A stretch of DNA of 63,450 nucleotides, filler included, from Octopus bimaculoides (lineage: Eukaryota), in the NCBI RefSeq assembly GCF_001194135.2. It is 8 parts of 8 records of this genome, joined end to end, with 100 filler letters (N's around TTAATTAATTAA, not from the genome) between each part and the next. Parts side by side here need not be neighbours in the genome. Positions count along the whole stretch, not along the records: positions 36,842 to 43,758 come from NC_068995.1; 7 more parts are not named here. One strand, written 5' to 3'. Below, one piece after another: positions 39,418 to 43,859 of this stretch (positions are counted from its first letter, which is position 1; each line of letters opens with the position of its first letter). Under the pieces are notes generated by a model. It did no database searches. It was given only the letters and a program-made list of their open reading frames with translations, and was not told the origin of the DNA. The translations under genes were made by a program, and so were the position numbers.

Positions 39418-39566
39418 TGGCGTTAGGAAGGGCATCCAGCTGTAGAAACTCTGCCAAATTTAGATTGGAGCCTGGTGTTGCCATCCGGTTTCACCAGTCC
39501 TCAGTCAAGTCGTCCAACCCATGCTAGCATGGAAAGCAGATGTTAAACGATGATGATGATGATGAT
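39418..39566 (+). mobile_element. Family E 3' portion
   Basis: Ends CCCATGCTAGCATGGAAAGCAGATGTTAAACGATGATG; inverted relative to 39999-40360. Confidence 0.85.
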
Positions 39567-39998
39567 ATATATATANNNNNNNNNNNNNNNNNNNNNNNNN
39601 NNNNNNNNNNNNNNNNNNNNNNNNNNNNNNNNNNNNNNNNNNNNNNNNNNNNNNNNNNNNNNNNNNNNNNNNNNNNNNNNNNNNNNNNNNNNNNNNNNNN
39701 NNNNNNNNNNNNNNNNNNNNNNNNNNNNNNNNNNNNNNNNNNNNNNNNNNNNNNNNNNNNNNNNNNNNNNNNNNNNNNNNNNNNNNNNNNNNNNNNNNNN
39801 NNNNNNNNNNNNNNNNNNNNNNNNNNNNNNNNNNNNNNNNNNNNNNNNNNNNNNNNNNNNNNNNNNNNNNNNNNNNNNNNNNNNNNNNNNNNNNNNNNNN
39901 NNNNNNNNNNNNNNNNNNNNNNNNNNNNNNNNNNNNNNNNNNNNNNNNNNNNNNNNNNNNNNNNNNNNNNNNNNNNNNNNNNNNNNNNNNNNNNNNNT

Positions 39999-40360
39999 CA
40001 TCATCATCATTGTTTAACGTCCGCTTTCCATGCTAGCATGGGTTGGACGATTTGACTGAGGACTGGTGAACCAGATGGCTACACCAGGCTCCAATCTGAT
40101 TTGGCAGAGTTTCTACAGCTGGATGCCCTTCTTAATGCCAATCACTCCGAGAGTGTAATGGGTGCTTTTACGTGCCACCGGCACGAAGGCCAGTCCGGAG
40201 GTACTGGCAGTGGCCACGCTTGAAATGGTGTATTTTACGTGCCACCTGCACAGGGGCCAGTCCAGCGGTACTGGCAACGAACTCGCTCGAATGCCTTTTT
40301 ACGTGCCACTGGCACAAGTGCCAGGAAGGCGACGTTGGTAACAATCACGCTCAAATGGTT
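39999..40360 (-). mobile_element. Family E repeat (GGCGTTAGGAAGGGCATCCAGC body, (GAT)n tail, ~65-bp internal tandem units); probably an RTE-related non-autonomous retroposon
   Basis: Copies at 30598-31000, 34770-34980, 37640-37945, 43440-43620 and 59465-59700 (minus) and 39418-39566 (plus). Confidence 0.8.
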
Positions 40361-40727
40361 CTATTTACACATACACACACACAGTGAGAGAAAGATAGAC
40401 AAACAGAGAGATGGTGGCTTTCTTTAATTTTCCATCTTGCAAATCCACTCACAAGGCTTAAGCTAACTCAGGGATATAGTAAAAGACGCTTGCTTAAGGT
40501 GCCATTCAGTGGGACTGAACCTGAAATCAAGTGGTTAGGAACTGAACTTCTTAGTCACACAGCCATGCCTGTGTTGAGAGAGAACAATATCAAATGTTGT
40601 CTTTGATATCCCTAAAAAAAGATGAGAATGGTTAAATACCATTTTGGTGACAGGTCTATTAGACCACAGTGGACCTAAGATTAAATGAGAACACCGACAA
40701 TTTCAAGAAGTGAAAGCAAGTACTTAC

Positions 40728-40874
40728 CAAGGGAACTAATATTATTGTTGCTTAAATTCAAAGAAGTGAGGTTTGTTAAACTGGAGAGAGGGATAAGGTT
40801 ACTTAAGTCATTGTTGGAGAGAATTAGATGTTCTAGACCAGTACATTCTTCAACACTGCCGACTTCATTGATAT
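40728..40874 (-). CDS. LRRC61: LRRC61-like protein, LRR exon (147 bp, phase 1-1)
   Basis: Acceptor attttccag|ATATC and donor CTTG|gtaagt. Translates HINEVGSVEECTGLEHLILSNNDLSNLIPLSSLTNLTSLNLSNNNISSL, with two LxxLxLxxNxL/I motifs and no stops. Confidence 0.9.
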
Positions 40875-41117
40875 CTGGAAAATAATATTTATCAGTTAGA
40901 AATAATACATTTCTAAATCTCTCAGAGAGACTTAAGCAGTAGTGACGCGATAAAGTAGTTGTATACTGCCAACTTAACGTGACAGTCCCAATAAGGGAAT
41001 CATACTACTGCTATTTAGCCCTAGGAAGCTGGACCGCTTCCTGTCAGCCTCGACAGATTTCCTGCGTCTTTATGTTTGCGAGGGGGAGACAAACTCCTCC
41101 ACCCAGCCTAGCCTGCA

Positions 41118-41160
41118 TTCAGGGACATGTTTTTGAGTTTTTGCTCATCATCAGCCTGAA
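41118..41160 (-). ncRNA. Type I hammerhead ribozyme motif, copy 1 (G12A core variant, intact GUC site)
   Basis: Minus strand reads TTCAGG CTGATGA TGAG CAAAAA CTCA AAAAC AT GTC CCTGAA: 6-bp helix I, CUGAUGA, 4-bp helix II, palindromic ACAUGU helix III, GUC. The GAAA element reads AAAA here. Confidence 0.8.
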
Positions 41161-41628
41161 GTAGCTGGCTGATAAATTTTTATTATGATCACTTGTCAAG
41201 CTCTTGCAAACATATTATTTCAGTGAAATACATTCACTGATTACAAAAATTAGAAATAATACATTTCTAAATCTCTCAGANNNNNNNNNNNNNNNNNNNN
41301 NNNNNNNNNNNNNNNNNNNNNNNNNNNNNNNNNNNNNNNNNNNNNNNNNNNNNNNNNNNNNNNNNNNNNNNNNNNNNNNNNNNNNNNNNNNNNNNNNNNN
41401 NNNNNNNNNNNNNNNNNNNNNNNNNNNNNNNNNNNNNNNNNNNNNNNNNNNNNNNNNNNNNNNNNNNNNNNNNNNNNNNNNNNNNNNNNNNNNNNNNNNN
41501 NNNNNNNNNNNNNNNNNNNNNNNNNNNNNNNNNNNNNNNNNNNNNNNNNNNNNNNNNNNNNNNNNNNNNNNNNNNNNNNNNNNNNNNNNNNNNNNNNNNN
41601 NNNNNNNNNNNNNNNNNNNNNNNNNNNN

Positions 41629-41662
41629 ATGTTTCTGAGTTTTTGCTCATCATCAGCCTGAA
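41629..41662 (-). ncRNA. Type I hammerhead ribozyme motif, copy 2 (intact core, 3' part in gap)
   Basis: Minus strand reads TTCAGG CTGATGA TGAG CAAAAA CTCA GAAAC AT, then N-gap. The catalytic core is canonical. Confidence 0.8.
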
Positions 41663-42962
41663 GTAGCATGACCAGCTGGCTGAAGAAGTCTGTCAAGCTC
41701 TTGCAAACATATATTATTTCAGTGAAACACAACTTAAATCTATCATAGTCTACAAGAATGGTTCCAAATATTTTACCATTGCAACAAATTTTTGACAAAT
41801 TAATAATTCTTCATCGTCTATATATTTTTTTTTTTTTTTAAATACTTAGTGAAATTTTTCAAAAGTTCATGGGGTTTTCACAGAACAGTGACAATCTAAA
41901 CAATTACATATCTAAAGAACCCCTTCAAGTCTTGAATGACCATGGAATTGCACCTAGAAAGTTACCATTCAGAGTACAAGTCTGGGCCAGGTTGTTTATG
42001 GAAGACCAGCAATTGCCCATGCATACCAGCCTCTCCTCTCCATGCCAAGGGACCAGCAAAGGCCGATACAGCTTGGCGCCAGTGACATTGCAACTCATTG
42101 CTGAGAAAACTGGAACAACATGAAATAAAGTGTCTTGTTCAAGAATACAACACACAACCCAGTCTGGGAATTGAACTCACTACCTTGTGATTGTGAACTC
42201 AATGCTCTAACCACTGATCCATGCACCTTCACAATTACATATCTGTTAATTATGTTCTGTTGTTTTATGTCATCAGAAACTATTGCCTCCATTCAGACAG
42301 CGTGTGGTCACAATATATGAAACAGTTATCAGATATTCATGTTTGAATCTGCAAGGACATATAGAGAAGGAATAGATTTGTTATTGCTTGGATTCTTGCT
42401 ATTCTGCATGTACCTCATGGATTATTATTTTCTTTGGCAGACATCAGTAAGCCTCAGTTAATAATTTGTTGGCTGATTTCTATAAACCTAAGCCACCTCA
42501 TAAGTGTGCATGTCTGTGTGTCTGTCAAATTATCATCATCATCATTTTTCTTTTCCATGTTGGTTAGACAGGTATTACAGCATCTCAAAATTAGTCAGTC
42601 TTTTATCATCTGGCATGCATATATGCACACGTATAGCAAGAAGAAAACATTCAGCCTTTGAAGATGTATCATGCATTTTTTGTTGTGTGTGTGTGTGTGT
42701 GTGGTGCATTGATTTTACAGCAGGATGCACTTCCTTGCATAGAATAGGTGCATTTTATCATGCCACTGATACTGCAGAAGTTGTCTGGGTGCAGGATTAT
42801 GGGGTTCCCTCCAACATGCGTTTGTTTTTATGAAGAGTTTCTGTTCTTTGAGACAGGTTCCATGAAATGCAGAGACCATCTCTAATCCACACATTCATTA
42901 CATAAACACACGCACACACACACACACAAAAGTACACCCAAATGACCATACAGTATACTCAC

Positions 42963-43049: not shown

Positions 43050-43101
43050 CTGTAAGAAAACAGAAAACACAGAGATCAATAAACAATAACTATTAAAACT
43101 A

Positions 43102-43229
43102 CAGGGTGTCCACAAGGTCTGGGTACATGGAGTAAATAAAATCATAACATAAACAATTAAATATAAGAAATAAAAATTTCTTAAAGTATGTGTTAATCCC
43201 CCATGTACCCAGACTTTGTGGACACCCTG
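43102..43229. mobile_element. Tc1/mariner-type MITE (128 bp)
   Basis: 29-bp terminal inverted repeats CAGGGTGTCCACAAGGTCTGGGTACATGG / CCATGTACCCAGACTTTGTGGACACCCTG (1 mismatch), with TA on both sides. Confidence 0.9.
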
Positions 43230-43859
43230 TAGAATACTGGATTCAATTCCAAATGTATTGAGACCTTTTGTTAATTTTTTTTCAGTGGACTACTGAAGTA
43301 GAGAACAGATTATTTAAACATAATTTCAGGACAGTGCCCCAGCATGGCCACAAAGAGTAATTATATTGGATAAATGAATTAGAGCTAATCTGTTGGATGT
43401 TCAGTGAATGACAGAGAAAACGATTGGACATTTAATATCATCATTATCATCATTTAATATCCATTTTCCATGCTGGCATGGGTTGGACGGTTTGACAGGA
43501 GCTGACCAACTGAAGGGCTGTTCAGGCTCCATGTCAGTTTTTGGCATGACTTCTATGGCTGGATGCCCTTCCTAACGCCAACCTCTTTACAGAGTATACT
43601 GGGTGCTTTTATGCAGCCCTTACAAGCCTGCAAGATTAGGGATGCTTAGTTGGAGAGGATTGCAAAGGATGAAACAGCTGTAAGCTAATGAAGTTCATAA
43701 AATAATCATTTGTTCCTTTATCATCTCACTTTTACATATATATATATATATATATATANNNNNNNNNNNNNNNNNNNNNNNNNNNNNNNNNNNNNNNNNN
43801 NNTTAATTAATTAANNNNNNNNNNNNNNNNNNNNNNNNNNNNNNNNNNNNNNNNNNNNT

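What the first reader, a model, noticed from the sequence alone, without database searches (positions are those of the whole stretch)
40896..41728. Retrozyme-like 354-bp tandem unit with type I hammerheads, sense-strand inside the LRRC61 intron
Seen: a 354-bp period (31-mer at 40896 and 41250), and each unit carries TTCAGG-CTGATGA-TGAG(CAAAAA)CTCA-RAAAC-AT-GTC-CCTGAA on the strand of the LRRC61 pre-mRNA. The array ends about 20 nt before the 40874 acceptor. Established: metazoan non-LTR retrozymes and Penelope-like elements carry type I hammerheads in tandem units of a few hundred bp; short palindromic helix III motifs (here ACAUGU) work as dimers, and monomers can yield circular RNAs. Inference: the upstream copy (41629-41662) has an intact core, while the downstream copy is G12A but keeps its GUC site. 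In a double-hammerhead fold the intact core could cut the pre-mRNA between 41124 and 41123, 249 nt before the exon, which could affect splicing or release a ~354-nt RNA. I am not aware of this being described in octopus but cannot check.
Basis: partly seen in the sequence, partly recalled or inferred. Interest (0 to 1): 0.9.

Follow-up and report, generated by a model that had tools for sequence, protein, structure and literature searches.

The report
Decaying hammerhead retrozyme copy in intron
A short tandem mobile element that carries self-cutting "hammerhead" RNA motifs sits in an intron of a leucine-rich-repeat gene, 21 bases before an exon; it is a partly damaged copy of an element type already known in many animals, and nothing yet shows that it cuts the gene's RNA.

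Summary
The core observation holds. On the minus strand, unit A (40896-41249, 354 bp) carries a complete canonical type I hammerhead (41160-41118). It has a 6-bp helix I, a 4-bp helix II with loop CAAAAA, ACAUGU as helix III, and a GUC site that would cut between 41124 and 41123. Its G12 is A (41133). A further 31 bases (41250-41280) repeat the start of the unit exactly. A diverged copy B (41629-41731) keeps G12, but runs into the N gap after GAAACAU, so its cleavage site and 3' helix I strand are not in the sequence. The gap's 348 N do not fit the repeat register, which needs 200 + 354n bases; the number of units is unknown, but at least about 1.95. The motif is on the same strand as two LRR exons (Pfam LRR_4, E 1.3e-16); the name LRRC61 is unverified. 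Every testable feature matches the non-LTR retrozymes of animals: 40.7% GC, no ORF, a monomer RNA far more structured than shuffles, and a weak helix III that needs a dimer. Verdict: a new member of a known kind, of modest interest.

The parts
40896..41731 (-). Whole tandem array: copy B (partial view), the assembly gap, a 31-nt unit tail, and full unit A. It holds at least about 1.95 units.
   Evidence: blastn of unit A against the piece finds only 41629-41731 and 41250-41280. There is no unit similarity upstream of 41731.
40896..41249 (-). Unit A, the only completely read 354-bp monomer. GC is 40.7% and no ORF exceeds 61 aa.
   Evidence: The monomer RNA folds with z -4.55 as a linear molecule and -4.76 as a circle.
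41118..41160 (-). Hammerhead A. Helix I is UUCAGG/CCUGAA, the core is CUGAUGA, helix II is UGAG-CAAAAA-CUCA, followed by AAA (G12A), ACAUGU and C17.
   Evidence: Rfam HH9 at 34.8 bits over 41173..41101. It is the only descriptor hit, with 1 of 2000 shuffles giving any hit. The MFE fold forms helices I and II plus a 10-bp outer helix I.
41133..41133 (-). Position G12 of hammerhead A, read as A. G12 is the general base of the hammerhead.
   Evidence: T at 41133 against C at 41635 on the + strand. The role of G12 is described in PMC6155905.
41123..41124 (-). Predicted scissile bond after C17 of GUC, 249 nt upstream of the exon.
   Evidence: Read directly.
41250..41280 (-). Last 31 nt (in RNA sense) of the neighbouring upstream unit. 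It is 100% identical to 40896-40926 and shows a unit-to-unit junction inside one contig.
41281..41628 (.). Assembly gap of 348 N. The repeat register requires 200 + 354n nt, so the real length and the number of units are unknown.
41629..41731 (-). Copy B, the 5'-most unit, seen only up to GAAACAU. G12 is intact (41635). It is 79.6% identical to A, with a +2-nt indel, a 21-nt stretch replaced by 7 nt, and a +9-nt insertion in outer helix I.
   Evidence: A truncated Rfam HH9 match scores 16.2 bits.
40875..40899 (-). 3' splice region: CUAAC (40899-40895, straddling the end of the element), CUGAU (40895-40891), a U-rich tract, and AG (40876-40875).
   Evidence: Read. The branch-point assignment is an inference.
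40728..40874 (-). Host exon of 147 nt coding LRR repeats, bounded by ag|...|gt.
   Evidence: Pfam LRR_4 gives E 1.3e-16 for this exon joined to exon 38269-38329.

Best explanation
This is an intronic insertion of a non-LTR retrozyme, a non-autonomous retroelement made of tandem units of about 354 bp that each carry a canonical metazoan type I hammerhead. It lies in the same orientation as a host LRR gene and ends 21 nt upstream of a 3' splice site.

The copy is decaying. The only fully read hammerhead has lost its general base (G12A). The 5'-most unit has acquired indels, including 9 nt in outer helix I.

The array is most likely transcribed passively as part of the intron and removed with it. 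Its helix III is one A-U pair closing a CAUG loop, so a single motif is not expected to cut. Any residual cleavage would need a double hammerhead, in which an intact core (copy B or a hidden unit) pairs with the GUC strand of unit A. That would cut at 41124|41123.

Shown: the anatomy, the strand, the register, and the structural propensity of the monomer. Inferred: the retroelement origin, the dependence on a dimer, and the weak or absent present-day activity.
For: - The complete hammerhead motif matches Rfam HH9 (34.8 bits, E 9e-8 locally) and is rare by chance (1 of 2000 shuffles; core pattern expected 0.13, found 2).
- Its architecture equals the published 'canonical' metazoan type I hammerhead: helix I 6 bp, helix II 4 bp, helix III 1-2 bp with a small palindromic loop, acting as dimers (PMC4209133).
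- The helix III type is the same as in the axolotl/newt HHR_Amex1, which cleaves poorly as a monomer and well as a dimer (PMC7229834).
- The tandem 354-bp period is confirmed. It lies within the 150-450 bp range, and mussel repeats are 350-390 bp.
- GC is 40.7% and there is no ORF.
- The monomer RNA is much more stable than shuffles (z -4.55 and -4.76).
- Helix III costs +5.3 kcal/mol in cis, whereas the ACAUGU self-duplex gives -4.6. The hybrid of the B core and the A site forms helices I and II.
- The gene exons lie on the same strand.
- Decay is visible as G12A and the indels.
Against: - No second locus of this element could be fetched, so membership of a dispersed multi-copy family is not shown.
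- The Rfam score is below the gathering threshold.
- A possible target-site duplication (TGATAGAT / TGATAAAT) is weak and does not cleanly abut the element.
- The gap hides 200 nt or more and could contain intact units, so 'decaying' may describe only the visible parts.
- No RNA data were available.
Confidence: 0.72

Rival explanations
1. One reading: an active intronic ribozyme. The G12-intact upstream core and the downstream GUC strand form a double hammerhead in the pre-mRNA. This cuts 249 nt before the exon, modulates splicing or transcript stability, and/or releases a ~354-nt RNA that can be circularised.
For: - Helix I and helix III strands are identical between the copies, so trans pairing is as good as cis.
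- The motif is on the sense strand.
- Dimer-dependent cleavage is documented for this helix III type (PMC7229834, PMC4209133, PMC6155905).
- Intronic sense hammerheads exist in amniotes (PMC6155905).
Against: - Copy B's own 3' half is unread.
- Copy B has a 9-nt insertion next to loop 1, which is needed for the tertiary contact.
- Both copies have U10.1-A11.1 instead of the consensus G-C.
- One of the two active sites is crippled by G12A.
- The divergence between units looks like neutral decay.
- No RNA evidence was obtainable.
- From my own knowledge: engineered intronic hammerheads do not necessarily block splicing (exon tethering; Dye, Gromak and Proudfoot 2006).
Confidence: 0.15
2. It is a fragment of a Penelope-like element: tandem pseudo-LTRs (pLTRs), or a solo pLTR array, rather than a stand-alone retrozyme.
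For: - PLEs carry hammerheads in their pLTRs and insert as partial tandems (PMC4209133, PMC8557442).
- Vertebrate retrozymes are closely related to pLTRs (10.64898/2026.07.22.740005).
- Such tandems commonly break short-read assemblies (PMC8557442), and a gap sits here.
Against: - There is no RT/GIY-YIG-sized ORF anywhere in the 6.9-kb piece.
- The period is 354 bp, not about 3 kb.
- The motif is the canonical type (helix I 6 bp, helix II 4 bp, with helix III). It is not the PLE 'min-HHR', which has a helix II of 7-8 bp, a short helix I and no helix III.
Confidence: 0.08
3. Assembly artefact: a single unit whose two haplotypes, or whose mis-joined contig ends, were placed on both sides of the gap.
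For: The gap lies inside the repeat, and its length (348 N) fits no integer register.
Against: - The contig to the left of the gap itself runs from a complete unit into the first 31 nt of another.
- Copy B ends in unique flanking sequence and differs from A by three indels.
Confidence: 0.04
4. A chance resemblance to a hammerhead in AT-rich intronic DNA.
For: The score is below Rfam gathering, and G12 is mutated.
Against: - Only 1 of 2000 shuffles gave any descriptor hit.
- The core recurs in a second, diverged copy with 38 of 39 bases identical, while the surrounding sequence has indels.
Confidence: 0.01

Closest known systems
Metazoan non-LTR retrozymes (Cervera and de la Pena 2020, PMC7229834), e.g. 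the mussel 350-390 bp and axolotl 331/353 nt repeats
   Same: Tandem units of a few hundred bp, each with a type I hammerhead. Low GC, no ORF or LTR, and a highly self-paired monomer RNA. The unit length of 354 bp is almost the same as in mussel and axolotl.
   Different: Only one locus with about two visible units was seen. No evidence of family copy number, transcription or circular RNA could be obtained. One core is mutated (G12A).
Amphibian satellite-2 / HHR_Amex1 hammerheads (newt, axolotl)
   Same: Helix III is reduced to one base pair closing a palindromic tetraloop (here A[CAUG]U), which implies cleavage as a double hammerhead. Helix I is 6 bp and helix II is 4 bp.
   Different: The host is said to be a cephalopod, not verified here. 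Invertebrate retrozyme hammerheads are described as usually having a more stable helix III. Pair 10.1-11.1 is U-A here.
Amniote intronic hammerheads HH9/HH10 (RECK, CTCL; Rfam RF02275)
   Same: Best Rfam match. Loop 2 (CAAAAA) is identical, UAC is present in the helix I internal loop, and the motif lies on the sense strand inside an intron.
   Different: The score is below the gathering threshold (34.8 against 52). Helix III is 5 nt shorter. The motif sits in a tandem repeat, not as a single ultraconserved motif. There is no evidence of conservation or domestication.
Penelope-like element pLTR hammerheads (min-HHR)
   Same: Type I hammerheads that act as dimers, with a tandem arrangement and a probable evolutionary link to retrozymes.
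   Different: The min-HHR has a long helix II, a short helix I, no helix III and no loop-loop contacts. PLEs carry an RT-EN ORF of about 3 kb, and none is present here.

Membership tests
Hammerhead ribozyme, canonical metazoan type I | Conserved core: CUGANGA ... GAAA ... N-U-H cleavage triplet | tested here: inconclusive
   Copy A has CUGAUGA and GUC present, but G12 is A (41133). Copy B has CUGAUGA and GAAA intact, but its cleavage triplet lies in the N gap.
Hammerhead ribozyme, canonical metazoan type I | Helix I of about 6 bp (open), helix II of about 4 bp capped by a loop, and helix III of 1-2 bp with a small palindromic loop | tested here: met
   UUCAGG/CCUGAA, UGAG/CUCA with loop CAAAAA, and ACAUGU. 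The definition is taken from PMC4209133.
Hammerhead ribozyme, canonical metazoan type I | Loop 1 and loop 2 nucleotides that make the tertiary contact | tested here: inconclusive
   Loop 2 is identical to the HH9 consensus, and UAC is present 5' of helix I. The 3' side reads UGC where HH9 has UAC, and copy B carries a 9-nt insertion nearby. No 3D test was possible.
Hammerhead ribozyme, canonical metazoan type I | Score at or above the Rfam gathering threshold | tested here: not met
   HH9 scores 34.8 bits against 52. Nothing in the piece reaches any gathering score.
Hammerhead ribozyme, canonical metazoan type I | Self-cleavage at the predicted site | not testable with these tools
   This needs in vitro transcription or mapping of RNA ends.
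Non-LTR retrozyme | Head-to-tail repeats of 150-450 bp, each with a type I hammerhead | tested here: met
   The period is 354 bp. One full unit, a 31-nt junction and a diverged partial unit are present, and both visible hammerhead segments lie on the same strand.
Non-LTR retrozyme | GC below about 45-50%; no LTR, PBS, PPT or coding capacity | tested here: met
   GC is 40.7%. The longest ORF in the unit is 61 aa, with no homologue.
Non-LTR retrozyme | Monomer RNA that is highly self-paired | tested here: met
   MFE is -110.6 kcal/mol with z -4.55. The circular fold gives z -4.76 with 60% of bases paired.
Non-LTR retrozyme | Dispersed multi-copy family in the genome, coexisting with PLEs | not testable with these tools
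   No collection on hand holds this genome. Searches returned nothing related.
Non-LTR retrozyme | Expression as linear and circular RNAs of unit length | not testable with these tools
Non-LTR retrozyme | Target-site duplication longer than 4 bp (when present) | tested here: inconclusive
   TGATAGAT lies about 11 nt upstream of the 5' boundary and TGATAAAT lies 1 nt after the 3' boundary, matching at 7 of 8 positions. The pair is weak and does not abut the element.
Penelope-like element (pLTR) | RT plus GIY-YIG ORF between direct repeats; min-HHR architecture | tested here: not met
   No ORF in the piece exceeds 109 aa apart from N-filled ones. The motif has a 4-bp helix II and a helix III, unlike the min-HHR.
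Amniote intronic hammerhead HH9/HH10 | Single motif conserved at an orthologous intron position across species | not testable with these tools
   No orthologous loci were obtainable. Here the motif lies in a tandem repeat and is mutated, which argues against this family.

The most novel reading that the evidence does not exclude
The array is not inert. An intact core, from copy B or from units hidden in the gap, pairs with unit A's GUC strand in the nascent LRR-gene transcript and cuts the intron 249 nt before the exon. This would give a cephalopod example of a retrozyme-derived ribozyme acting on a host pre-mRNA. It might be tunable, because only the dimer fold is active. It would also mean that an active retrozyme family with an amphibian-type, dimer-only hammerhead makes circular RNAs in this animal.
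Probability: 0.1. Interest if true: 0.55.

Novelty: new member of a known kind. Interest (0 to 1): 0.3.

Why it matters
I found no paper describing them in octopus; the nearest record is a count of 235 Hammerhead_1 hits in the giant squid genome (PMC6962438). The helix III type is noteworthy because it has so far been described as typical of amphibians rather than invertebrates. The sense orientation, 21 nt from a splice acceptor, makes this locus a convenient natural test case for whether an intronic dimeric hammerhead affects splicing. However, intronic retrozymes and intronic hammerheads are both already known, and this copy shows signs of decay.

Tried and rejected
I therefore had no read depth, no gap closure, no RNA ends and no circular junctions, and read laying was unusable.
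- Other copies through spurious ORFs: the 61-aa ORF of the unit has no homologue. Exact look-ups of four window ORFs found no contigs.
- Host protein: a 69-aa peptide from the two exons found nothing at E<=1e-8. The gene name and the organism therefore stay unverified.
- Metagenome scan with CTGATGANNNNCAAAAANNNNRAAACATGTC: three unrelated contigs. Only one (L003) is a convincing hammerhead, and none is the same element.
- Whole-piece Rfam scan at E<=10: it missed the motif because of filtering. The motif appeared only in a 111-nt search.
- A third degenerate unit upstream of copy B: rejected, with an alignment score of 17 against a shuffle mean of 16.6.
- tRNA/SINE-type promoter in the unit: ARAGORN found nothing. 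The bacterial promoter scan is irrelevant here.
- EMBO Rep 2010 paper on HH9 (PMC2933863): not held.

Full report
**What is in the sequence**

All coordinates are read on the minus strand, which is the RNA sense of the host gene. The stretch 41160..41118 reads UUCAGG CUGAUGA UGAG-CAAAAA-CUCA AAA AC-AU-GU C CCUGAA. This is the layout of a type I hammerhead:
- an open 6-bp helix I;
- the CUGAUGA box;
- a 4-bp helix II with a 6-nt loop;
- the GAAA box, here AAAA, so G12 is A at 41133;
- a minimal helix III;
- a GUC triplet whose C17 is 41124.

Rfam's Hammerhead_HH9 model aligns over 41173..41101 with 34.8 bits (E 9e-8 in a 111-nt search). The alignment shows a further outer helix I (AGCC/GGCU) beyond an internal loop that contains UAC. 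The score is below the gathering score of 52. Nothing in the piece reaches a gathering score, and the whole-piece scan at E<=10 missed the motif because of its filters.

A descriptor of my own required the CUGANGA box, a 4-bp helix II, RAA, an A...U-closed helix III, H17, and at least 5 of 6 pairs in helix I. It hits once in the piece. Only 1 of 2000 dinucleotide-preserving shuffles had any hit. The looser core pattern occurs twice, against 0.13 expected. The motif is not chance.

**The repeat and the gap**

Unit A spans 40896-41249 (354 bp). The next 31 bases (41250-41280) repeat 40896-40926 exactly. One contig therefore contains a unit-to-unit junction.

Beyond the gap, 41629-41731 is a second copy (B), 79.6% identical over 108 columns. 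The hammerhead segment matches at 38 of 39 positions, and the only difference restores G12 (41635). Around it there are three differences: a 2-nt indel, a 21-nt stretch replaced by 7 nt, and a 9-nt insertion between the outer helix I strand and UAC. Copy B stops at ...GAAACAU at the gap edge. Its GUC triplet and 3' helix I strand are not in the data, so the statement that 'each unit carries' the whole motif is unverified for B.

In register, 41629 equals 41127 of A, and 41280 equals 40926 of A. The missing sequence must therefore be 200 + 354n nt. The 348 N fit neither value, and the 502-bp spacing between the hammerheads is meaningless.

Upstream of 41731 there is no similarity to the unit (score 17 against a shuffle mean of 16.6). 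No other fragment of the unit exists in the piece. The array therefore runs from about 41731 to 40896 and holds at least about 1.95 units.

**Host gene and strand**

The minus strand carries an exon at 40874..40728 (ag|AUAUCAAU...CCCUUG|gtaagt) and another at 38329..38269. Joined, they give three 22-residue leucine-rich repeats (Pfam LRR_4 E 1.3e-16). The nearest solved structures are of the SDS22/internalin type. The hammerheads are therefore on the sense strand of an intron.

The name LRRC61 and the organism could not be checked. The protein search found nothing at E<=1e-8.

The element ends 21 nt before the acceptor AG. Two branch-point-like motifs lie there: CUAAC straddling the end of the element (40899-40895), and CUGAU in the flank (40895-40891). 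The minimal 3' splice region was therefore left intact, or was supplied by the element. This is an inference only.

**What it is**

Every feature that I could test agrees with the non-LTR retrozymes of animals (PMC7229834):
- tandem units of 150-450 bp with a type I hammerhead (mussel 350-390 bp, axolotl 331/353 nt);
- GC below 50% (40.7% here);
- no LTR, PBS or ORF;
- a strongly self-paired monomer RNA (-110.6 kcal/mol against -85.5 +/- 5.5 for shuffles, z -4.55; z -4.76 when folded as a circle).

The ribozyme has the 'canonical' metazoan architecture defined by Cervera and de la Pena (PMC4209133): helix I 6 bp, helix II 4 bp, and helix III 1-2 bp with a small palindromic loop. It is not the Penelope-type min-HHR.

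Its helix III is in effect one A-U pair closing the palindromic loop CAUG. This is the type described for newt and axolotl HHR_Amex1, which cleaves poorly as a monomer and well as a dimer. In my energy evaluation, forming helix III in cis costs +5.3 kcal/mol, whereas the ACAUGU self-duplex gives -4.6 kcal/mol.

**How it most likely works**

In a double hammerhead the extended helix III joins two copies. Each active site is built from the core of one copy and from the U16.1-C17-helix I strand of the other (principle in PMC6155905 and PMC4209133). A co-fold of the visible part of B with the substrate strand of A forms helices I and II (-45.4 kcal/mol).

Several points argue against present-day activity:
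- B's 9-nt insertion lies next to loop 1.
- Both copies have U10.1-A11.1, where the consensus is G-C.
- B's own 3' half is unread.
- The indels look like neutral decay.
- Both copies can form an alternative hairpin, AUCAGCC...GGCUGAU, that sequesters the CUGAUGA box. This hairpin appears in the monomer's MFE fold.

I therefore rate a passively transcribed, decaying retrozyme copy as most likely (0.72). I rate the active-cleavage model at about 0.15.

**Comparison with what is known, and novelty**

Intronic retrozymes are not unusual. In Xenopus, 42-44% of copies overlap introns, although this is a relative depletion (10.64898/2026.07.22.740005). Sense-strand intronic hammerheads are known in amniotes (RECK and CTCL genes, PMC6155905).

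I found no paper describing hammerhead retrozymes in octopus. The giant squid genome paper lists 235 Hammerhead_1 hits without analysing them.

This is a new member of a known kind.

**Limits**

No other copy of the element, no orthologous locus and no reads could be obtained. Family size, age, expression, circular RNA and cleavage all remain untested.

Noticed in passing
window 41143-41171 (minus strand) and 41645-41682: In both copies the CUGAUGA box can be locked in an alternative hairpin, AUCAGCC...GGCUGAU, which the monomer MFE fold prefers over helix I. It may be an inactive conformer like those of viroid hammerheads.
   Followed up: partly
window 40891-40899: Two branch-point-like motifs lie just before the acceptor: CUAAC straddles the last 4 nt of the element, and CUGAU lies in the flank. 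The insertion sits immediately upstream of the minimal 3' splice region.
   Followed up: no
window 37645-37954, 39418-39570 (inverted), 39998-40366, 43430-43586: Four copies of an interspersed repeat of about 300-370 bp, 83-95% alike. It has internal 67-bp tandem sub-repeats (TTTTACGTGCCACC...). Two copies flank the second gap in inverted orientation.
   Followed up: partly
window 39576-39997: A second assembly gap of 422 N inside the downstream intron. It is bordered by a (GAT)n/(ATC)n microsatellite and by inverted copies of the repeat described above.
   Followed up: no
window 43099-43232: A near-perfect 32-nt inverted repeat around a 70-nt AT-rich loop. The fold is -69.9 kcal/mol with z -10.6, so it is MITE-like. 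It explains the spurious Rfam miRNA/sRNA matches.
   Followed up: partly
window 42130-42235 and 40500-40575 (minus strand): Stretches that look like tRNA-derived SINE heads, with A-box and B-box-like GTGGTTAGAGC ... GAGTTCAATTCCCAG. ARAGORN calls no tRNA there.
   Followed up: no
window 38332-38457: A long (ATA)n/(ATG)n microsatellite abuts the acceptor of the 38329 exon. On the RNA strand it forms a (UAU)n tract directly upstream of the 3' splice site.
   Followed up: no
L003 6803-6833 (minus strand), metagenome contig Ga0123355_10047944: An unrelated, well-formed type I hammerhead with the same loop 2 and helix III style: ACUCC CUGAUGA UGAUCAAAAAGAUC GAAAC AUGUC GGAGU. It probably comes from animal DNA in a metagenome.
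   Followed up: no
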